DNA of 64,000 bases, taken from positions 124,001 to 188,000 of IMG/VR virus record IMGVR_UViG_3300027793_000052. One strand, given 5' to 3'. A program made the translations under genes and the position numbers. The notes under the pieces were generated by a model that worked only from the letters and a program-made list of their open reading frames with translations, ran no database searches and was not told where the DNA came from. Shown here in pieces: positions 11,665-59,443 of this stretch. The first letter of the stretch is position 1; the number at the start of each line of letters is the position of its first letter.

Positions 11665-11691
11665 AAAAAACCCCGAAATTTCGGGGTTTTT
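11665..11691. terminator. Bidirectional intrinsic terminator
   Basis: aaaaaaccccgaaatttcggggttttt between convergent genes. Confidence 0.88.
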
Positions 11692-11695
11692 ATTT

Positions 11696-14005
11696 TTAAA
11701 AATAAATTTCTTTAATTATACCTTCTAATTCTAAAGGCGGTACACCAATCCAATCTTTTATATTATTAGACATAACAGGTTTACCACCCTTACTTCTATC
11801 TACAGCGATTGTTATATGTGGTGTTGTTGTTTTTGTAACTAATTCCGTATCTACTTTGACTGCCATTACATTATCTAACTCACCTACATGTGTCACAACT
11901 AAGTCAATTGATTGACCTAACAGTGGTTTATAAACTTCTTTTATAGGACCCATGTTTATTGTCATATGGTGTGCAATAACTTCCCAACCCTTAGGTATGT
12001 TTAAAGATTTAATCAACCTAATTCTAGATTCTTCTGTTAATACAACAGCAGAATAAGATACTTTTTTAACTTCTTCTTTTATTAACTTTTTGAAAATCTC
12101 CCTCTCAATTCTATCTTTCTCAACACCTATTTCCCTACCTTTAAAACCTTGTTTTATTAATTCTTCACCAGATGTTGTTACTTTATAATTTATGAATGCT
12201 TCAACTGATTTTGGGTTTATGTTGTTCATTTGACCAAAAATTCTTAACGTATCGTCATCCATTTTTATAGCGTCATATCTTTCTCTAAGTTTATATAAAT
12301 CACCACTATTAGTCTTAAAAAATTGTATTAAGAAGGCAATCTTTTTACCTTCTTCAGACGTATACTTAAGTGTGTCAACCAAGTACTTTTCAACCAACTT
12401 AGGTTCATTACTTACAAGTAAAGTAGCTATAAGTACCAATGGATTTCTAGTTTCTATTAATGGATCCGTAGTCACTACAAGTCTACCGAATATCCAATCC
12501 CATAGGTTTAGGTTGGTTATCATTTGTGTGAAATAACCAACAGACTGTGATTGTTTAACACCTTTTAAGAATTCATCCCTAATTCTTTCCTGTGATAGTG
12601 GTAAACCGTTACCACTTATTGGTGTTTTATCTTTAGTTATAGCGTCAACAATATCCTTATCTAATTGTGAACCAACTCTAGACGCAAATCTAATTGCTCT
12701 AAGTATACGTAATTTATCCTCATCAAAACGTTCTGAGGCTGAACCAACTGTTCTAACCACATTACCTTCTATATCACCAATACCACCAACTAAATCCACA
12801 ACCTCCCCTTTATCTATATCATAAAATAAAGCGTTAATGGTTAAGTCACGTCTTTTAACATCTTGGTCTATTGTTGTAAACTCAACAGAGTCTGGTCTAC
12901 GTCCTTTTCCCACATCTTTCCGGAACGAAGCGAGTTCAAACTCACCATCAGGTGTTATAACATTAACTACACCAAATTGTTCACCAACTTCAATTGTTCT
13001 AAACATGTTTAACATGGATTTAACAACTTCAGGTGTGGCATTTGTGGCCAAATCAAAATCCTTAGGTTCCTGACCTAATAATAAATCTCTAACAGCACCA
13101 CCAACAACATATAACTCATAACCGTTATCTTTAAAGATTTGGTTCATTTGTTTTACCGAGTTAGGTAAATCCATATTTATCTTTTTCCTTACAACATTTT
13201 CATTTATGTTAGGTTTTTTATATAAAGGATTTTTTATATATATTGTTAAATCTTGTTCGTTTGATTTATAGTATCTAAAATCTTTAAAAAAAGACCAACA
13301 TTTATTATCATAACACTCACTATTATCATGGTTGTTATAACCCACCCGACCTAAGTAATCAGAACCCAAATCATCTTTATTATAAAATTTAACTAAAATT
13401 AAATCTTTACCAAGAGTTGTTATACCTTCATCTATTATGACCCCCAAATCCATATTAAACTCAGCATCAATATCATCACCGTTAATTAATACCTCCATAC
13501 CTTTTTTTAACAAACCAATTGTGGGTATGATAAATTCTTTATCAGTTTCATCATCACCAATAACATCTTCCACCCAACTATATTCATCATATTCTTTTAC
13601 TATACTTTCATTTATTTTGGTTGAAACTAATATTTTTAAATGTTCAGAATCCTCAAATTTTGTATAATCTCTCATAAATGACCAACATTTTTTACCACGA
13701 CAATCTTCTTTGTAGCTATCCCACATAGGTGTTGACATGTTGATTACATTCTCGTCAAATTTTTTATCGTTAAATTTAACTAAAATAACATCGTTACCCA
13801 CATGCTGTCTAATACCGATAATAAAACCAATATCATCATTAAAAATAACATCTTCATCTTGTAAATCATAACCATTTACCAAAACAGTATCATTAATATT
13901 TAACATTTCTTTTGATACTGCAGGGACAAACCCACTACCTAGTGTATCATTAACCCATTCAAAATCATCAAATTCTTTTAACATTTTTTTAATAAGATCT
14001 TTCAT
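11696..14005 (-). CDS. cca: Multidomain protein: two N-terminal repeats, class II CCA-type tRNA nucleotidyltransferase, C-terminal 2H phosphoesterase
   Basis: VVGGAVRDLLLG..PKDFDLAT, RRDLTINALFYD, RFDEDKLRILRAIRF. C-terminal HHMTI...PHITI are paired HxT motifs. The PAP-type GRRF signature is absent (VGEQFGVV). Confidence 0.88.
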   Translation of the reverse strand: MKDLIKKMLKEFDDFEWVNDTLGSGFVPAVSKEMLNINDTVLVNGYDLQDEDVIFNDDIGFIIGIRQHVGNDVILVKFNDKKFDENVINMSTPMWDSYKEDCRGKKCWSFMRDYTKFEDSEHLKILVSTKINESIVKEYDEYSWVEDVIGDDETDKEFIIPTIGLLKKGMEVLINGDDIDAEFNMDLGVIIDEGITTLGKDLILVKFYNKDDLGSDYLGRVGYNNHDNSECYDNKCWSFFKDFRYYKSNEQDLTIYIKNPLYKKPNINENVVRKKINMDLPNSVKQMNQIFKDNGYELYVVGGAVRDLLLGQEPKDFDLATNATPEVVKSMLNMFRTIEVGEQFGVVNVITPDGEFELASFRKDVGKGRRPDSVEFTTIDQDVKRRDLTINALFYDIDKGEVVDLVGGIGDIEGNVVRTVGSASERFDEDKLRILRAIRFASRVGSQLDKDIVDAITKDKTPISGNGLPLSQERIRDEFLKGVKQSQSVGYFTQMITNLNLWDWIFGRLVVTTDPLIETRNPLVLIATLLVSNEPKLVEKYLVDTLKYTSEEGKKIAFLIQFFKTNSGDLYKLRERYDAIKMDDDTLRIFGQMNNINPKSVEAFINYKVTTSGEELIKQGFKGREIGVEKDRIEREIFKKLIKEEVKKVSYSAVVLTEESRIRLIKSLNIPKGWEVIAHHMTINMGPIKEVYKPLLGQSIDLVVTHVGELDNVMAVKVDTELVTKTTTPHITIAVDRSKGGKPVMSNNIKDWIGVPPLELEGIIKEIYF

Positions 14006-14040
14006 ATATAGTAAATATCTACAACTACTGCATATTTATA
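14006..14040. promoter_or_regulatory. Divergent pair of candidate late promoters (cca gene / prohead protease)
   Basis: GATATTTAC on the minus strand (14011-14019) and CATATTTATA on the plus strand (14031-14040). Confidence 0.5.
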
Positions 14041-14055
14041 TAATAAACTTTAAAA

Positions 14056-14868
14056 ATGAAAATTTTAAAACCAGGTGAAACAAATACTAGGGGATTTTTA
14101 GTTGAATATGATTCCGGATTTGTGGCCTCTAATTTATCTTATAAAGGTAAAACAAATTCTGATTTAATTAAAGAACACCTACAATATTTAAACGAGTTTA
14201 AATCGGGTACAAACATAGGGAAAGATGGTAGTTTACCAGAAACAATCATAGTATACGCTGTATTACAAAAATGGGGAATTGAAAATAAAAACGGTAGAAT
14301 TTACCCTAAAGAAATTCTAGAAAGAGAAAACAAAAGATATCAGGAATATATAAAAATGGGTACATCTTTAGGTGAGTTAAACCACCCAGAGTCTTCAATC
14401 ATTGACGCCGATAGAGTATCACATAGAATTACTGAAACATGGTGGGATGGTAAAACTTTAATGGGTAAATTAGAACTTGACACAACACCGGGTTACCACA
14501 AAATGGGTATTATATCTTCTGTTGGTGATAAAGTGGTTAACATGATTAGAAAAGGTTGGACAGTTGGTATTTCATCTCGTGGTGTTGGATCCCTTAAACA
14601 AGAAGGTGGTAAAAATGTTGTACAAGATGATTTCGAATTAATATGTTGGGATATTGTTACATCACCGTCTACCCCAGGTTCTTGGATATCTTCTGAGGAA
14701 GGTGATTTAAAACAGTTTACAGAATCTTATATAAAAGATAACGGTTGTAATGGTTACACATGTCAATGGAATTTAATGGAAGAAAATGAACCAACCGAAA
14801 TCCATTTTAATTCAATACCTACATCAAATAATAAAATATTAAATAGCTTAAATAAATTTTTAAAATGA
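14056..14868 (+). CDS. Prohead core protease (T4 gp21-like)
   Basis: NKNGRIYPKEIL, GELNHP, VGISSRGVGS, DFELICWDIVTSPSTPGS. Confidence 0.92.
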   Translation: MKILKPGETNTRGFLVEYDSGFVASNLSYKGKTNSDLIKEHLQYLNEFKSGTNIGKDGSLPETIIVYAVLQKWGIENKNGRIYPKEILERENKRYQEYIKMGTSLGELNHPESSIIDADRVSHRITETWWDGKTLMGKLELDTTPGYHKMGIISSVGDKVVNMIRKGWTVGISSRGVGSLKQEGGKNVVQDDFELICWDIVTSPSTPGSWISSEEGDLKQFTESYIKDNGCNGYTCQWNLMEENEPTEIHFNSIPTSNNKILNSLNKFLK

Positions 14869-15818: not shown

Positions 15819-15840
15819 TCAATATAATATTTTAATATAA

Positions 15841-15877
15841 ATAAGGGATATGTGGTTTACATATCCCTTATTTTTTT
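15841..15877 (+). terminator. Intrinsic terminator
   Basis: 13-bp stem ataagggatatgt/acatatcccttat followed by a T-tract. Confidence 0.85.
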
Positions 15878-15912: not shown

Positions 15913-16173
15913 ATGAATGATAATGTAGCAAAATACTTCTTAGTGAAAGTAGAATTTGAAACCATCAACGAAAATAATGGTAAACCAAAAAAGATTAGAA
16001 CACAGTATCTTGTTGATGCTATGACATGTACTGAGGCTGAGGCACGTACACGTGTTTATTTAAAAGATTCTGTAATGGATTATGAAATTGTTAGTACAAC
16101 TAAGAGCCCTATTGAGGATATTATCTTAGTACCAGATCCTGAATTACAACCGAAAGTTGTAAGTAAAAATTAA
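15913..16173 (+). CDS. DUF4494-like protein (Bacteroidota family)
   Basis: YFLVKVEFE...GKPKKIRTQYLVDAMTCTEAEAR resembles DUF4494. Confidence 0.7.
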   Translation: MNDNVAKYFLVKVEFETINENNGKPKKIRTQYLVDAMTCTEAEARTRVYLKDSVMDYEIVSTTKSPIEDIILVPDPELQPKVVSKN

Positions 16174-16643
16174 TGTCTATATTTTTTAGGTAGACCAACA
16201 CGATCTGCCAAATCTTGAAATATACCTTTATGATTTCTGGCTTCAGTGTTTTTATGTCCATGTGAAGCGTGTATTAATTCATGTTTCAGAATATCTTCAA
16301 CATATTCTTTATCTTCTAAGGCTTTGGGATGAATTTTCATAATTCCAAGGTCTTTTTCGTTTTCAGGGTGTTTAAATGATCCAATTTTACCAGCTTTAAT
16401 ATTGTCATCAACTTTTACCACAATATTATCATCACTAACTGGTTCTTCACCAGTTATATCTTTATAAGCATTTTTTACTTTTTTACCAATCTCATCTTTC
16501 ATATGACTAATTTTTTTAGTCTCAGCAGGATATTTTGACTTTTTAATAATTTTTTTTTGCATATAATCTGCTTTATCAGAAACGTCGTTTTTTGATTGAT
16601 TTTCTACAAATTCCCTTAAAATAAGTCTGATTTTATCTTTCAT
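16170..16643 (-). CDS. SprT-like zincin metalloprotease
   Basis: KHELIH (HExxH) with downstream H (HKGIFQDLADRVG); N-terminus MKDKIRLILRE. Confidence 0.7.
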   Translation of the reverse strand: MKDKIRLILREFVENQSKNDVSDKADYMQKKIIKKSKYPAETKKISHMKDEIGKKVKNAYKDITGEEPVSDDNIVVKVDDNIKAGKIGSFKHPENEKDLGIMKIHPKALEDKEYVEDILKHELIHASHGHKNTEARNHKGIFQDLADRVGLPKKYRH

Positions 16644-21826: not shown

Positions 21827-22672
21827 ATGAGAGAATTAATTAAGAAAATATTAAAAGAGGCACGTGTACCTAGGGAAGAAAGGGTGGAACTATATAAGGA
21901 CGATAATATAATTGTTGTTGTTCCACTAACTCATAAAGCCTTACAAAAGTACGCAAACCAATGTCAATGGTGTATTAATAGTGATTTAGGTGAATGGGAA
22001 GATTACCATAAAGGAATGCATGCTATAATCATCCAAAGAAATCCAAAAAAAGATAAAATCGGTATAACAGGACATCGTGTGGCTGAAGAGATTTTACTTA
22101 TGGGCAGGTGGGATGAAGGTGGTTACACTTTTAAAGATGTTTGTGATATATTAGGTTATCAATTTAAAAATGAAACCGATATGGGTGATTATTATGTAAC
22201 AGTTACAAATGACATAAATAACTTCGCGACCAATATAGTTTATTACTCACCAGAAAATGGTATATACGACCAAGAAGATAATTTCTTATGGAACTTTCAT
22301 TACGAAATATCTGATATACCAAACGTAACACCAAATGTTGTCCATATTATGGATGATTATCTTTGGAGAAGTTCCTCATTAAAAGAATCAGAAGACGGTT
22401 TTGATTGGGCTAAAGAATTAATTGATGCTGATGGTATTAATACTGAGGTTTTAAATTATTTAAAAACAAATTATCCAAAAAAAACCGAATCAACGCCTTA
22501 TTTTGGGTTAAAATCTTTTATCATAATTGATGATAAACCATATTATTTTGATTATAGCTCCAAAAAATTAATATTAAATAAAATATATTGGGAGATTGAG
22601 GATGAATTTAACCATGTAGTTAAAAGTGTTTTAAGACGTACAATTAGACATTATATCAATAGTCTAATCTAA
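21827..22672 (+). CDS. PcfJ-like domain protein with tagged N-terminus
   Basis: YKDDNIIVVVPLTHKALQKYANQCQWCINS; starts MRELIKKILKE. Confidence 0.65.
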   Translation: MRELIKKILKEARVPREERVELYKDDNIIVVVPLTHKALQKYANQCQWCINSDLGEWEDYHKGMHAIIIQRNPKKDKIGITGHRVAEEILLMGRWDEGGYTFKDVCDILGYQFKNETDMGDYYVTVTNDINNFATNIVYYSPENGIYDQEDNFLWNFHYEISDIPNVTPNVVHIMDDYLWRSSSLKESEDGFDWAKELIDADGINTEVLNYLKTNYPKKTESTPYFGLKSFIIIDDKPYYFDYSSKKLILNKIYWEIEDEFNHVVKSVLRRTIRHYINSLI

Positions 22673-25784: not shown

Positions 25785-25811
25785 AAAAACCCCGAGAAAT
25801 CGGGGTTTTTT
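25785..25811. terminator. Bidirectional terminator at the strand switch
   Basis: aaaaaccccgagaaatcggggtttttt. Confidence 0.85.
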
Positions 25812-26089
25812 TATTTATTAAATTTCTTTTCTAAAAACTTATAGATAACACCTTTATTGTGTTTTTCGATTAAATTTGTTTTATGTACATGTAAATCGTA
25901 CAACTCCTTACAATTATCATTAAGTTGTTTAATGGTTTCATATTCTTCATCAGTTAACATGATGTTAGTATTTATTTGTTCAGGATAAAATTTATCAGTG
26001 GATGGTACTAAATAACCACCCTTTGTAAATTTATATGGTTTTGTTTTAACCACATCTTCTTTTAATATTTTCTTAATTAAATCTTTCAT
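25811..26089 (-). CDS. Hypothetical tagged protein
   Basis: Likely start MKDLIKKILKE at 26089 (TAATG overlap). Confidence 0.6.
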   Translation of the reverse strand: MKDLIKKILKEDVVKTKPYKFTKGGYLVPSTDKFYPEQINTNIMLTDEEYETIKQLNDNCKELYDLHVHKTNLIEKHNKGVIYKFLEKKFNK

Positions 26090-57586: not shown

Positions 57587-57970
57587 TTAAAATTTTGCCT
57601 GTTTAAATATTGTTATCATACTTCTATCCCCATTAGGGTTATATTTTGGTATATTTGAAATTCTATCTGAAATTGGTGTGTTAAAAGTTCGACCCAATTC
57701 TTGCCAATCTCTTATTTTATCCAATCTAAAAGTTTTCCAACCTGGTTGTTCGGTATCAGTAACACCTGCATATTGATATGCACGTAATATTAAATTTTCT
57801 CTAGGAGAGACACCTAACACGTAAGGTTCAATACTACGTCGACCTGGGTTGATTGTTTCATCACCCTCATAATAAATTTCAATTAAATCATGATTTGTGA
57901 TAGCCTTTTCAACTTCATTCCTACTAGCTTCTTCTACAATAATTTCTTTTAGGAGATTGTAAAGCTTCAT
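57587..57970 (-). CDS. Stand-alone WYL-domain protein
   Basis: IYYEG...GRRSIEPY.LG...LRAY...GWKTFRLDKI. Confidence 0.82.
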   Translation of the reverse strand: MKLYNLLKEIIVEEASRNEVEKAITNHDLIEIYYEGDETINPGRRSIEPYVLGVSPRENLILRAYQYAGVTDTEQPGWKTFRLDKIRDWQELGRTFNTPISDRISNIPKYNPNGDRSMITIFKQAKF

Positions 57971-59070
57971 CTTACCGATATATTGTTTTTAATAAATAGT
58001 TCATATAAATCATAATTATCATTATATTTAATACGTATCAGTTTTATATTATTTTTTTTACAATAATTATCTTTAATTTCGTCACATTTTTTAGTCCTTT
58101 CGAACTCGATACCACTTTTATCTAAGTTATGTGGTCTAAAGTGTTGTACACCATCGTATTCAATACATGTATTATAATCCGGTAAGTAAAAATCAAATTT
58201 TAAAGGTAATTTATACCTACAATTAGGAAAACTGTGTTGTTGTATATAATTAATCAAATTATCATCTAAAAAACCCTTAATCATTAATTCACCTTTAGAT
58301 GTGTTACAACTTGGGCAACCAGAACCGTTTAAATGGTTATTTGGTTTTTGATTGAATTCACCGTGTTTAGGACATGTGATAACCACTTTTGTTTTTGAAT
58401 CCACATATTTAAGGTATTTATAATCGTATTTGTTTTTATGGACTTTTTTGGCTAATTCAATAAAAACTTCTGTAGTATGAAATAAACTTTCTTTATAACA
58501 TATAGGACACCCACAACCGTTTATATGGCTAGTTGGTTTTTGTTTAAAAACACCGTGTTGGTTACATAGTATATCTACTTTGGTGTAGTTGTTCACATAA
58601 TTAACCATTGAATAATCATATCTAGACCCATGTTTTGATGTTGCTTTATTTATAAAAATTTCTTTAGAGGATCTGGTATCTGAACATTTAGGGCATTCAC
58701 AACCTTTTAAATGTAACTTTGGTTTTTGTGAAAATTTACCGTGTATTGGACATATGATATCTACATTTGTGTTTGTGTTTATATAATTAACTAAAGAGTA
58801 ATCATACTTATAACCGTGTATTTTTTTAAACCCGTTTATCACATTTTCTTTACTATTAGCAAATAACTTTGATAATTTATTTTTAGCACAAGATGGACAA
58901 GCACTTTTCTTACTTAAATGATTATTGGGTGTACACTCAAAAACACCGTGACTTGGACATATAATTTTAACTTTAGTATAATTATTATAATATTCTACTA
59001 AAGAATAATCATAACTTGAGTTATGTATTATTTTTGATTTACTAATAAAATCATATGTTTTTGTGTTCAT
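57967..59070 (-). CDS. Free-standing putative homing endonuclease: 4 zinc-ribbon repeats plus PD-(D/E)xK domain
   Basis: 4x YDY..V.Y....KV.I.C..HG.F.Q.P..H..G..CP.C; LKFDFYLPDYNTCIEYDGVQHF; paralogue of 31184..32086. Confidence 0.78.
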   Translation of the reverse strand: MNTKTYDFISKSKIIHNSSYDYSLVEYYNNYTKVKIICPSHGVFECTPNNHLSKKSACPSCAKNKLSKLFANSKENVINGFKKIHGYKYDYSLVNYINTNTNVDIICPIHGKFSQKPKLHLKGCECPKCSDTRSSKEIFINKATSKHGSRYDYSMVNYVNNYTKVDILCNQHGVFKQKPTSHINGCGCPICYKESLFHTTEVFIELAKKVHKNKYDYKYLKYVDSKTKVVITCPKHGEFNQKPNNHLNGSGCPSCNTSKGELMIKGFLDDNLINYIQQHSFPNCRYKLPLKFDFYLPDYNTCIEYDGVQHFRPHNLDKSGIEFERTKKCDEIKDNYCKKNNIKLIRIKYNDNYDLYELFIKNNISVR

Positions 59071-59089
59071 AATTAATTTGGGTGCTATT

Positions 59090-59443
59090 TTACCAATGTT
59101 GCTCTGGGTATGATATGTTATTATACCCATTTCCGTTACCAGGTTTGTACTTATTACCTGATGAGTATAATAAAGTATTTTTGGTCATAATGTCTGTTTT
59201 AGTACCTACTTGGTTGTTAGTTTCACCACGACCTTTTTCATCCATATCACTTAAAGCATTAGGGTGTTGTGCATTATATCTGTCATTATTATTATCTTTG
59301 TAATCATTTAAGACAGTTAATTTTACTCTTTCACTATCAGCTGTAGCTTTTAAACTAGGTAATTGGTTTAAGACACCACCTGGTCCCATATCCTGAACAC
59401 TGTTAGCGTCAGTTAAGATTGGAGAGATTGTTTGTGCTGGCAT
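59090..59443 (-). CDS. Hypothetical protein
   Basis: 117 aa, Asn-rich. Confidence 0.6.
   Translation of the reverse strand: MPAQTISPILTDANSVQDMGPGGVLNQLPSLKATADSERVKLTVLNDYKDNNNDRYNAQHPNALSDMDEKGRGETNNQVGTKTDIMTKNTLLYSSGNKYKPGNGNGYNNISYPEQHW

What the first reader, a model, noticed from the sequence alone, without database searches (positions are those of the whole stretch)
11696..14005. Single-chain tRNA 3'-end repair enzyme: CCA nucleotidyltransferase fused to a 2H phosphoesterase, capsid-tagged
Seen: residues ~278-640 form a class II CCA-type nucleotidyltransferase (DFD, RRDLTIN, EDKLR; no PAP GRRF signature), and residues ~649-769 carry two HxT motifs (H680, H730) typical of 2H cyclic phosphodiesterases. 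Known: many anti-phage ribonucleases leave 2',3'-cyclic phosphates, and in eukaryotes tRNAs stripped of CCA are repaired by ELAC1 (phosphate removal) followed by TRNT1. Inference: this protein may couple end-healing and CCA re-addition to counter host tRNA 3'-end damage (nuclease toxins or abortive infection), and the tag suggests delivery with the virion. A 2H enzyme alone gives a 2'- or 3'-phosphate, so a partner phosphatase may be needed. The 2H domain could alternatively degrade cyclic-nucleotide immune signals, as Acb1-type 2H proteins do. The flexible loop (RKDVGKGRRPD) looks slightly short, so CC- versus CCA-adding specificity is open.
Basis: partly seen in the sequence, partly recalled or inferred. 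Interest (0 to 1): 0.82.

Follow-up and report, generated by a model that had tools for sequence, protein, structure and literature searches.

The report
Phage CCA-adding enzyme fused to cyclic phosphodiesterase
An uncultured freshwater T4-like phage encodes one protein that joins a tRNA CCA-adding enzyme to a miniature RNA 2',3'-cyclic-phosphodiesterase and carries a short N-terminal tag shared with three neighbouring proteins, so it probably heals and rebuilds clipped tRNA 3' ends and may travel inside the virion.

Summary
ORF 11696-14005 (-) encodes 769 aa. Residues about 270-640 are a class II tRNA nucleotidyltransferase with DxD, RRD and EDxxR intact; solved CCA-adding enzymes are its best matches. 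Residues 641-769 fold with high confidence (pLDDT 96.6) into a minimal 2H phosphoesterase. Its closest structures are CNPase (Z 13.3) and the CPD domains of fungal and plant tRNA ligases. The protein's only two HxT motifs (H680, H730) lie there and are conserved throughout the family.

The roughly 125-aa "mini-CPD" is common in uncultured phages. Of the 150 best clusters, 96 are stand-alone and 25 are fused to a class II NTase, in either order. Others are fused to HAD phosphatase, kinase-like or further 2H domains.

The 11-residue tag (MKDLIKKMLKE) is real. It occurs on four ORFs near the head genes, is far above chance, is conserved on orthologues and ends in LxE. The gene lies next to a T4 gp21-type prohead protease gene.

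Residues 12-269 are two SH3-like beta-barrel repeats of unknown role. tRNA 3'-end repair and virion packaging are both inferred, not shown. The E. coli CCA enzyme, with its HD domain, already combines the same two activities using a non-homologous phosphoesterase. This is a new variant of a known kind.

The parts
11696..14005 (-). Whole ORF, 769 aa plus stop: tag, two beta-barrel repeats, class II NTase, mini-2H
13973..14005 (-). N-terminal 11-residue tag MKDLIKKMLKE (residues 1-11), ending in L-K-E
   Evidence: Shared by 4 ORFs. Far above chance. Conserved on orthologues in L001, L004, L005 and L006. T4 capsid-targeting precedent in PMC9026906.
13601..13972 (-). Repeat module 1 (residues 12-135): SH3/Tudor/CAP-Gly-like small beta-barrel with a CxxxxCWSF motif
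13199..13600 (-). Repeat module 2 (residues 136-269), 33% identical to module 1. Relatives carry 0, 1 or 2 such modules.
12086..13198 (-). Class II (CCA-type) tRNA nucleotidyltransferase, residues 270-640: head, neck, body and tail. Carries D316xD318, RRD 385-387 and EDKLR 429-433.
11699..12085 (-). Minimal 2H phosphoesterase (mini-CPD), residues 641-769, of the CNPase / tRNA-ligase CPD type
11960..11968 (-). First catalytic motif H680-M-T682, on a predicted beta-strand
11810..11818 (-). Second catalytic motif H730-I-T732, on a predicted beta-strand
11666..11691 (.). Palindromic GC-rich hairpin flanked by A and T runs, between the convergent genes: a likely bidirectional terminator ending the transcription unit
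   Evidence: Metatranscriptome contigs break here.
14006..14055 (.). 50-nt divergent intergenic region shared with the prohead protease gene. Holds a TATAAATA box at 14033-14040 (-).
   Evidence: The box is not enriched in the window, so its promoter role is unproven.
14056..14868 (+). T4 gp21-type prohead protease (Peptidase_S77), divergent neighbour. The adjacency is conserved in relatives.
16170..16643 (-). Second tag-bearing ORF (MKDKIRLILRE), a weak SprT-like metalloprotease
21827..22672 (+). Third tag-bearing ORF (MRELIKKILKE), 281 aa, no family match
25811..26089 (-). Fourth tag-bearing ORF (MKDLIKKILKE), 92 aa

Best explanation
The gene encodes a bifunctional tRNA 3'-end 'heal and rebuild' enzyme of a freshwater T4-like phage.

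**Shown by computation.**
- The protein has an intact class II, CCA-type nucleotidyltransferase.
- That enzyme is followed in the same chain by a minimal 2H phosphoesterase of the CNPase / tRNA-ligase CPD clade.

**Inferred mechanism.**
- A metal-independent ribonuclease, or spontaneous transesterification, clips a tRNA within or next to CCA and leaves a 2',3'-cyclic phosphate.
- The 2H domain opens this to a 2'-phosphate with a free 3'-OH, as its closest relatives do.
- The NTase then re-adds the missing C, C and A.
- The fate of the 2'-phosphate is unknown. It may need a host or phage phosphatase or a Tpt1-type enzyme, or the NTase may tolerate it.

**Second inference, about 0.35-0.4 on its own.**
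- The 11-residue N-terminal tag ending in LxE is a T4-style capsid-targeting sequence.
- It loads the protein into the prohead, where the adjacent gp21-type protease trims it after E11. The protease may also cut at the [LIV]xE sites that flank each N-terminal module.
- The enzyme is then ejected with the DNA and acts before phage gene expression begins.

The two SH3-like N-terminal modules are accessory, since relatives have 0 to 2 of them. Their role is unknown.
For: **NTase identity and intact motifs.**
- Pfam, PHROG and PDB matches.
- A family profile ranks six CCA-adding enzymes ahead of E. coli PAP.

**2H fold.**
- pLDDT 96.6.
- CNPase matches at Foldseek E 1e-4 and at Z 13.3 with rmsd 2.2 A over 123-125 of 129 residues.
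- The best AFDB-SwissProt hits are the S. pombe, Arabidopsis and S. cerevisiae tRNA ligases, followed by CNPases.
- A homologue, P0055, passes the Pfam tRNA_lig_CPD cut-off.
- The HxT motifs are invariant.

**Functional link between the two domains.**
- 25 of the 150 best mini-CPD clusters also carry a class II NTase, as NTase-CPD or as CPD-NTase.
- The mini-CPD is also fused to an NT5C/HAD domain and, in viral atlas clusters, to HAD_SAK_1 or AAA_33 kinase-like domains. Further LigT-like 2H domains occur beside it in the same proteins. These are typical RNA end-healing partners.

**Precedents.**
- The E. coli CCA enzyme's HD domain removes 2',3'-cyclic phosphate (PMC6961547).
- ANKZF1, ELAC1 and TRNT1 recycle clipped tRNA, and Trl1 CPD yields a 2'-phosphate (PMC10275265).

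**Tag.**
- Shared by four ORFs, far above chance, conserved on orthologues.
- Adjacent S77 protease with conserved synteny.
- In T4, a 10-residue capsid-targeting sequence suffices for packaging, and its processing depends on residues 8 and 10 (PMC9026906).
- 4 of the 5 [LIVM]xE sites in the first 300 residues lie at module boundaries.
- Some mini-CPD relatives sit in very large multidomain proteins with ART-PolyVal or GNAT domains. That protein class has been proposed to be delivered with the DNA (PMC5512222).

**Expression.** Freshwater metatranscriptome contigs cover the gene as a separate unit bounded by the hairpin and the divergent region.
Against: - No activity, substrate or virion proteome exists for this protein or any relative.
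- NCBIfam CCA and pcnB models score nearly equally and all fall below their cut-offs. Sequence therefore does not settle CCA-, A- or poly(A)-adding specificity.
- This protein's own Pfam CPD hit is below threshold (14.5 against 23 bits).
- Residue-level superposition of the HxT motifs on CNPase could not be inspected.
- A 2'-phosphate product might block or alter CCA addition. No phosphatase, RNA ligase, kinase or Tpt1 was found among the window ORFs scanned, apart from a weak HAD_PNKP-like 97-aa ORF.
- The window holds no tRNA genes.
- No known bacterial defence is documented here that clips CCA ends.
- The gene lies on the opposite strand to the head genes, and its RNA-library depth is 4-6 times lower than its neighbours'.
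- P1' residues after the tag (F, A, D, E) are not known substrates of any characterised gp21-type protease.
- TATAAATA boxes are not enriched in the window.
Confidence: 0.55

Rival explanations
1. The chemistry is the same but the purpose is ordinary. The enzyme matures and maintains tRNA CCA ends during infection, for phage-encoded tRNAs lacking encoded CCA or for host tRNA turnover. The 2H domain only clears spontaneous cyclic-phosphate ends, as the HD domain of E. coli Cca does. It is not a counter-defence device and it is not packaged.
For: - CCA-adding enzymes are common in jumbo phages and are read as restoring CCA (PMC7824862).
- Relatives of this phage reach 312 kb.
- 500 phage records hold NTase homologues.
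- E. coli Cca-HD is a housekeeping precedent.
- RNA-library depth for the gene is modest.
Against: - The window holds no tRNA genes, although the rest of the genome was not seen.
- The conserved tag and the fixed position beside the prohead protease are not explained by this reading.
- The mini-CPD also occurs in ART-PolyVal and GNAT-containing giant proteins typical of conflict systems.
Confidence: 0.25
2. The 2H domain does not heal RNA ends. It degrades nucleotide immune signals (cyclic oligonucleotides, 2'-5' oligoadenylates or 2',3'-cNMPs), as Acb1 or viral 2',5'-phosphodiesterases do, and the fused NTase acts independently.
For: - 2H domains in phage polyvalent proteins were proposed to act as RNases or 2'-5' oligoadenylate degraders because they are not linked to RNA ligases (PMC5512222).
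- Some mini-CPD-bearing giant proteins also carry an Acb1 / 2_5_RNA_ligase2-type 2H domain.
- A phage phosphodiesterase (9q2y) and rotavirus VP3 appear as weaker fold matches.
Against: - Z is 13.3 to CNPase against 7.3 for 9q2y and 5.6 for VP3.
- The best AFDB hits are tRNA-ligase CPDs.
- Pfam Acb1 does not hit this domain.
- The Acb1 atlas cluster scores 0.88 against 0.96 for CPD-type clusters.
- In giant proteins the Acb1-like 2H is an extra domain beside the mini-CPD, which suggests the two have different jobs.
- Recurrent fusion with tRNA NTases in both orders argues for a shared RNA substrate.
Confidence: 0.1
3. The NTase is not a CCA-adding enzyme. It is a poly(A) or other tailing polymerase that marks host or phage RNAs, and the 2H domain prepares their cyclic-phosphate ends for tailing and decay.
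For: - The TIGR01942 pcnB model scores almost as well as the CCA model (175.8 against 180.5 bits).
- E. coli PAP is only about 8 bits behind the CCA enzymes.
Against: - There is no G[RK][RK]F PAP signature. The equivalent stretch reads GEQFGVVNV, like the G-x-x-H/F-G of CCA enzymes in the alignment.
- The top six solved matches to the family profile are CCA enzymes, and human TRNT1 aligns over about 280 positions.
- PHROG full-length matches are to tRNA nucleotidyltransferases.
Confidence: 0.08
4. The shared N-terminal motif is not a capsid-targeting sequence. It is an amphipathic helix used for something else, such as translation efficiency, membrane or complex association, or degradation control, and the protein acts only inside the infected cell.
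For: - Lys-rich N-termini are common in AT-rich genomes.
- Three of the four tagged genes lie on the strand opposite the head genes.
- No T4-type late promoter signal could be established.
- There are no proteomic data.
Against: - Identity among the four tags is far above chance and is kept on orthologues that have diverged elsewhere.
- The tag has the length of the T4 CTS and ends in [L]-x-E.
- All four tagged genes lie within 11.7-26.1 kb, around the head module, and none lies in the other 38 kb.
- A gp21-type protease gene is adjacent.
Confidence: 0.45

Closest known systems
E. coli multifunctional CCA-adding/repair enzyme (Cca with C-terminal HD domain; Yakunin et al. 2004, as cited in PMC6961547)
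   Same: One polypeptide joins a class II CCA-type NTase to a C-terminal phosphoesterase that can remove a 2',3'-cyclic phosphate from tRNA 3' ends. The logic is the same: heal, then re-add CCA.
   Different: The phosphoesterase is not homologous. This protein has a metal-independent 2H fold, whereas E. coli Cca has a metal-dependent HD domain. The HD domain also has 2'-nucleotidase and phosphatase activity, so it can finish the job alone; a 2H domain is expected to stop at the 2'-phosphate. The phage protein adds a tag and two beta-barrel modules. It scores only 90.7 bits against the 451-bit cut-off of the NCBIfam model for that enzyme.
CPD domains of fungal and plant tRNA ligases (Trl1, AtRNL), and vertebrate CNPase/RICH
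   Same: The best structural matches. They share the two HxT motifs. The only Pfam family hit is tRNA_lig_CPD. These enzymes open RNA 2',3'-cyclic phosphates to 2'-phosphate/3'-OH (PMC10275265).
   Different: The phage domain has about 125 residues against about 210-250; it is the bare core without the insertions. Sequence identity is 11-18%. It is coupled to an NTase, not to a kinase plus ligase. This protein's own Pfam score is below threshold.
Eukaryotic ANKZF1/Vms1 - ELAC1 - TRNT1 tRNA recycling pathway
   Same: CCA is clipped leaving N73 with a 2',3'-cyclic phosphate, the phosphate is removed, and CCA is re-added (PMC10275265). This is the pathway the phage protein would perform in one chain.
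   Different: The eukaryotic pathway uses separate proteins. ELAC1 is a metallo-beta-lactamase fold, not 2H. No bacterial clipping enzyme is identified here.
Phage T4 tRNA repair (Pnkp plus Rnl1) against anticodon nucleases
   Same: A phage-encoded RNA end-healing activity that restores tRNAs damaged by host nucleases.
   Different: T4 repairs anticodon-loop breaks by kinase/phosphatase plus ligase. This protein has no ligase or kinase, and rebuilding is by template-independent CCA addition at the 3' end.
T4 capsid-targeting sequences of internal proteins IPI-III and Alt, processed by gp21 (PMC9026906)
   Same: A short N-terminal peptide (10 residues in T4, 11 here) is shared by several otherwise unrelated proteins. 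It ends in [L/I]-x-E, and the phage encodes a gp21-type (S77) prohead protease.
   Different: There is no sequence similarity to MKTYQEFIAE beyond the pattern. Packaging and cleavage are untested. An RNA repair enzyme as cargo has not been described.
Polyvalent proteins of phages and conjugative elements (PMC5512222)
   Same: Some relatives of the mini-CPD, with or without an NTase, sit in 750-2300 aa multidomain proteins with ART-PolyVal or GNAT domains. This class has been proposed to be delivered with the DNA.
   Different: That paper does not mention CCA-type NTases (0 occurrences). It assigns its 2H domains a signal-degrading or RNase role. This protein has only two catalytic domains.

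Membership tests
Class II (CCA-type) tRNA nucleotidyltransferase | Pol-beta head domain with GGxVRD...DxD (motif A) | tested here: met
   VVGGAVRD...D316-F-D318. Pfam PolyA_pol 122 bits against a cut-off of 23. Nearly invariant in the family.
Class II (CCA-type) tRNA nucleotidyltransferase | Motif B (RRD) and motif D (EDxxR) nucleotide-selecting residues | tested here: met
   R385-R386-D387 and E429-D430-K-L-R433 are invariant in 21 sequences.
Class II (CCA-type) tRNA nucleotidyltransferase | Flexible loop between motifs A and B, needed for A addition and deleted in CC-adding enzymes | tested here: inconclusive
   The loop is present and only 2 residues shorter than in the Planococcus CCA enzyme. 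Relatives tolerate a gene split exactly here. The functional consequence is unknown.
Class II (CCA-type) tRNA nucleotidyltransferase | Score above the curated NCBIfam equivalog cut-off for a CCA enzyme | tested here: not met
   The best is NF009814 at 180.5 bits against a cut-off of 290, and only the first half of the model matches. The body and tail are divergent.
Class II (CCA-type) tRNA nucleotidyltransferase | Adds exactly C, C, A to tRNA 3' ends | not testable with these tools
   Needs an enzyme assay.
Bacterial poly(A) polymerase I (PcnB) | PAP signature [LIV][LIV]G[RK][RK]F after motif A (from my own knowledge of Martin and Keller 2004), and the TIGR01942 cut-off | tested here: not met
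   No G[RK][RK]F anywhere in the protein. TIGR01942 scores 175.8 against 305.65, and NF008634 scores 119 against 702.
2H phosphoesterase superfamily | Two H-x-T/S motifs on two central beta-strands | tested here: met
   H680-M-T682 and H730-I-T732 are the only such motifs in the protein. They are conserved. Both lie on predicted strands, at domain residues 40-44 and 90-95. Residue-level superposition was not available.
2H phosphoesterase superfamily | 2H fold | tested here: met
   Z 13.3 and rmsd 2.2 A over 123-125 of 129 residues to CNPase. The first unrelated fold (Ebola VP40) scores Z 2.8. Foldseek probability is 1.00.
tRNA-ligase CPD / CNPase clade (Pfam PF08302 tRNA_lig_CPD) | Score above the Pfam gathering threshold | tested here: inconclusive
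   This protein scores 14.5 bits against 23. Homologue P0055 scores 25.1, P0124 25.2 and P0126 31.0, all above threshold. The matches cover only the second half of the model.
tRNA-ligase CPD / CNPase clade | Hydrolyses RNA 2',3'-cyclic phosphate to 2'-phosphate | not testable with these tools
   Needs an enzyme assay with product analysis.
Acb1-type anti-CBASS 2H phosphodiesterase | Match to Pfam PF23474 or closest fold relatives among Acb1 proteins | tested here: not met
   No Acb1 hit at E up to 10. The atlas Acb1 cluster ranks 70th at 0.88. In P0124 and P0132 the Acb1-like 2H is a separate domain beside the mini-CPD.
T4-type capsid-targeting sequence (CTS) | N-terminal peptide of about 10 residues, shared by several unrelated proteins of one phage, ending in [L/I]-x-E | tested here: met
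   Four ORFs carry it and it ends in L-[KR]-E at residues 9-11. It is conserved on orthologues.
T4-type capsid-targeting sequence (CTS) | Phage encodes a gp21-type prohead protease and a T4-type head module | tested here: met
   Peptidase_S77 at 14056-14868, Portal_T4 and Gp23.
T4-type capsid-targeting sequence (CTS) | Protein is present in virions and cleaved after the tag | not testable with these tools
   Needs virion proteomics or a protease co-expression assay.

The most novel reading that the evidence does not exclude
The enzyme is cargo of the capsid. It is loaded through an 11-residue targeting tag, trimmed by the prohead protease and ejected with the genome. The phage therefore arrives with a ready-made tRNA 3'-end repair activity. 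This would imply that its freshwater hosts use a still undescribed defence or toxin that clips tRNA acceptor ends and leaves 2',3'-cyclic phosphates. It would also imply that the many NTase-mini-CPD fusions in uncultured phages, including those inside giant polyvalent proteins, are a widespread counter-measure.
Probability: 0.2. Interest if true: 0.85.

Novelty: new variant of a known kind. Interest (0 to 1): 0.63.

Why it matters
- **A second, convergent solution.** It would join CCA addition to cyclic-phosphate healing with a 2H domain where E. coli uses an HD domain. That argues that cyclic-phosphate-blocked tRNA 3' ends are a recurrent problem during phage infection.
- **A name for an unannotated domain.** The roughly 125-residue mini-CPD is about the smallest 2H domain I am aware of. 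It is abundant in uncultured phages: 1084 clusters at E up to 0.001. It is labelled hypothetical in the cultured-phage records that hold it and 'unknown function' in PHROGs.
- **A testable question.** It points experimenters to ask which host nucleases attack the acceptor end, and whether a class II NTase can extend a 2'-phosphorylated terminus.
- **A tool, if the tag works.** A confirmed capsid-targeting signal would define a portable tag in a non-enterobacterial T4-like lineage. It would also add an RNA repair enzyme to the list of proteins that phages inject.

Tried and rejected
- **T4-type late promoter.** TATAAATA occurs 31 times against 23.7 +/- 4.7 expected, and it is not placed before the head genes. 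The box at 14033-14040 therefore proves nothing about timing. Sigma-70-like sites are also at chance level.
- **Profile search of the mini-CPD against PDB sequences.** It returned only noise. The fold had to be reached through structure prediction.
- **N-terminal module.**
  - The word-index homologue search found nothing.
  - Pfam gave only a sub-threshold DUF5864 hit.
  - Fold searches gave a best Z of 7.0 and Foldseek E above 1e-3, to CAP-Gly, Tudor, KOW, SH3 and DUF4314 barrels.
  - I call it an SH3-like small barrel and nothing more.
- **Cultured-phage collection.** No record covers 80% or more of the protein. Only 13 records hold the mini-CPD, all labelled hypothetical or unannotated, and their neighbourhoods were uninformative apart from a nearby TROVE gene.
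- **tRNA genes.** The window holds none.
- **Partner enzymes.** No RNA ligase, polynucleotide kinase, Tpt1 or clear phosphatase turned up among about 45 window ORFs scanned. Not every ORF was scanned.
- **Literature.** No paper in the searchable library describes an NTase-2H/CPD fusion. Burroughs and Aravind 2016 (NAR 44:8525) is the likeliest place for a prior mention and could not be retrieved. Prior description is therefore not excluded.
- **DNA-level cassette as the source of the tag.** Rejected, because upstream sequences do not align.


Full report
**1. What is there**

The ORF runs exactly as reported, 11696..14005 on the minus strand, and encodes 769 aa.

It is a single-gene unit:
- Upstream, a 50-nt intergenic region is shared divergently with the prohead protease gene.
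- Downstream, a perfect GC-rich hairpin flanked by A and T runs (11666-11691) lies between it and the convergent gene.

The window has about 29% G+C.

Around the gene the window carries a T4-type head module:
- a large terminase with a LAGLIDADG intein
- a gp20 portal
- a gp21-type S77 prohead protease
- an acidic scaffold-like protein
- a gp23 capsid protein

The capsid protein is at most 43% identical to that of any cultured phage. The DNA recurs in many freshwater metagenomes. This is an uncultured freshwater T4-like phage, and relatives reach at least 312 kb.

**2. The nucleotidyltransferase**

- Pfam PolyA_pol covers residues 298-418 (E 2.3e-35).
- PHROG 2244 'tRNA nucleotidyltransferase' covers residues 295-643.
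- The best solved relatives are CCA-adding enzymes. With a family profile, the six best are bacterial and human CCA enzymes, ahead of E. coli poly(A) polymerase.
- The catalytic DxD (316-318), RRD (385-387) and EDxxR (429-433) are present and invariant or nearly so in 21 relatives.
- No G[RK][RK]F poly(A)-polymerase signature exists.
- The flexible loop is kept and is two residues shorter than in a bona fide CCA enzyme.

Curated NCBIfam models for CCA enzymes and for PcnB score about equally, and all fall below their cut-offs. 'CCA-type' is therefore well supported, but the exact specificity (CCA, A only or tailing) is not settled by sequence.

**3. The C-terminal domain**

The protein's only two HxT motifs are H680-M-T682 and H730-I-T732.

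An exhaustive HMMER search with residues 641-769 found 1084 clusters at E up to 0.001. An alignment of 56 diverse members shows conserved histidines and threonines plus a G-G-K-P-x-x-S-N signature.

AlphaFold2 on that alignment gives pLDDT 96.6, with both HxT motifs on beta-strands.

The model matches:
- the mouse CNPase catalytic domain, at Foldseek E 1e-4 and TM about 0.7
- the same domain at Z 13.3 and rmsd 2.2 A over 123-125 of 129 residues, while other viral 2H phosphodiesterases score Z 5-7 and unrelated folds 2.8 or less
- in AFDB-SwissProt, the CPD domains of the S. pombe, Arabidopsis and S. cerevisiae tRNA ligases first, then CNPases

Pfam tRNA_lig_CPD hits this protein below threshold and several homologues above it.

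The domain is thus a stripped-down 2H core of about 125 residues, from the clade whose characterised members open RNA 2',3'-cyclic phosphates to a 2'-phosphate (PMC10275265).

**4. Evidence that the two domains work together**

Among the 150 best mini-CPD clusters, my HMM scan counted:
- 96 stand-alone proteins of 180 aa or fewer
- 25 that also contain a class II NTase, mostly as NTase-CPD but also as CPD-NTase (P0245, P0266, P0257)

Pfam confirms PolyA_pol plus PolyA_pol_RNAbd in these proteins.

Other partners:
- an NT5C/HAD domain and, in viral atlas clusters, HAD_SAK_1 phosphatases and AAA_33 kinase-like domains
- additional LigT/Acb1-like 2H domains, GNAT and ART-PolyVal in giant proteins

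Fusion in both orders, together with end-healing partners, is the signature of a shared RNA-end substrate. The stated precedent is the E. coli CCA enzyme, whose HD domain removes the cyclic phosphate from damaged tRNA ends (PMC6961547).

**5. The N-terminal part**

Residues 12-135 and 136-269 are tandem copies of one module (33% identity, E 9e-14). The module has invariant W, D, G, G, L, F and a CxxxxCWSF motif.

Relatives have two, one or no copies: about 767, 646 and 510 aa respectively.

The model (pLDDT 80.5) is a small beta-barrel. It resembles CAP-Gly, Tudor, KOW and SH3 domains only at a generic level, with a best Z of 7.0. Its role is unknown.

**6. The tag**

Four ORFs start with M[KR][DE]xI[KR]x[IM]L[KR]E:
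- this gene
- 16170-16643 (SprT-like)
- 21827-22672
- 25811-26089

Statistics and conservation:
- Three pairs share at least 7 of 10 residues, against 0.005 expected, and none do at internal control offsets.
- Upstream DNA does not align.
- The tag persists, with conservative changes, on orthologues of the NTase and of the SprT-like protein in three more distant relatives.
- All four tagged genes lie within 11.7-26.1 kb, around the head genes.
- The NTase gene is always next to, and divergent from, the S77 protease gene.

In T4, the first 10 residues of internal protein III suffice for encapsidation, and processing depends on positions 8 and 10 (PMC9026906). Here L9 and E11 occupy the equivalent places.

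Only five [LIVM]xE sites occur in the first 300 residues, and four of them lie at the tag/module/NTase boundaries. This is suggestive but post hoc. Packaging is a reasonable inference and is untested.

**7. Expression**

In three freshwater metatranscriptome runs, assembled contigs stop at the hairpin 11666-11691. In two of the three they also stop at the divergent region.
- Depth over this gene (about 3-5 in two runs) is several-fold below the flanking units (11-32).
- It is far below the start of the scaffold gene (115 to 793).
- A DNA run is flat at 20.7.

This fits transcription of the gene as a separate, modestly expressed unit. Contig depths are crude and carry no strand information.

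**8. Mechanism and rivals**

The most likely mechanism (0.55) is that the 2H domain opens a 2',3'-cyclic phosphate on a clipped tRNA acceptor end and the NTase rebuilds CCA. Whether the 2'-phosphate left behind is tolerated or removed by another enzyme is open. No partner was found in the scanned ORFs.

Delivery in the virion has a separate probability of about 0.35-0.4.

Rivals:
- ordinary CCA maintenance without a defence context (0.25)
- an Acb1-like signal-degrading 2H domain (0.1; disfavoured)
- a poly(A)/tailing enzyme (0.08)
- a tag with a role unrelated to the capsid (0.45 for that sub-claim)

**9. Novelty**

The searchable literature mentions:
- phage CCA enzymes (PMC7824862)
- 2H domains in phage polyvalent proteins (PMC5512222)
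- the E. coli HD precedent

No paper described an NTase-CPD fusion. One likely source could not be retrieved.

I rate this a new variant of a known kind. The functional logic is known, the phosphoesterase module is new, the family is abundant but unannotated, and there is a possible virion-delivery twist.

Noticed in passing
L005:5510-7323 and L006:4860-7323 (relatives of the window gene): In these relatives the NTase gene is split exactly in the flexible loop, after FRRD and before GSGRRPDS. The result is a tagged 136-139 aa head ORF and a 440 aa ORF, each with about 25-30 extra residues at the break. L006 has a GIY-YIG/NUMOD3 homing-endonuclease ORF in the 721-nt gap, whereas L005 has only 80 nt. 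The 440-aa form is common, listed in 58 blocks of the collection. This looks like a naturally split class II NTase, or an intron remnant.
   Followed up: partly
window:2549-5707 (+): The large terminase subunit is interrupted by a LAGLIDADG-type intein (Intein_splicing, LAGLIDADG_3 and Hom_end hits). The relatives in L001 and L004 have about 610-aa ORFs at the same position, without the intein.
   Followed up: no
window:10084-11220 (+): A glutamine-synthetase-like gene (Gln-synt_N and Gln-synt_C) sits inside the head module, between the portal and the prohead protease. The placement is conserved in all relatives examined (L001, L004, L005).
   Followed up: no
window:16170-16643 (-), 21827-22672 (+), 25811-26089 (-): Three more ORFs carry the same N-terminal tag. 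One is a weak SprT-like metalloprotease (HExxH region), and the other two have no family match. If the tag targets the capsid, these are candidate ejected proteins.
   Followed up: partly
window:33000-56800 (-): A long run of sugar-nucleotide and glycosyltransferase genes, unusual in size for a phage: NTP_transferase, Glyco_transf_61, Glycos_transf_2 and a PRK/uridine-kinase fusion.
   Followed up: no
window:16780-16900 and 15839-15873: In metatranscriptome run X8, a contig starting at 16780 (the start of the acidic scaffold-like gene) has depth 793, against about 21 for the neighbouring genes. A second strong hairpin at 15839-15873 coincides with contig breaks. The phage appears to be actively transcribed in lake samples.
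   Followed up: partly
window:31184-32125 (-) and 57967-59130 (-): Two ORFs carry DUF723 plus treble-clef zinc-finger domains, and one also has a PvuRts1I-like N-terminal domain. They are probably homing-endonuclease-like selfish genes.
   Followed up: no
window:20111-21793 (+): An ORF just after the capsid gene combines a Mom-like domain, an MTES_1575 restriction-endonuclease-like domain and a C2H2/Ros-MucR zinc finger.
   Followed up: no
L008:4001-4408 (Bacteroides phage PhiCrAssBcn4): A stand-alone mini-CPD homologue, annotated as hypothetical, lies about 1.1 kb upstream of a TROVE (Ro60-like) gene. This is another RNA-quality-control association.
   Followed up: no
window:38830-39123 (-): A 97-aa ORF starts MKVIYVDIDETI (HAD motif I) and has a weak, sub-threshold HAD_PNKP match (E 0.0017). 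It is the only phosphatase-like candidate seen in the window, and it lies inside the sugar cluster.
   Followed up: no
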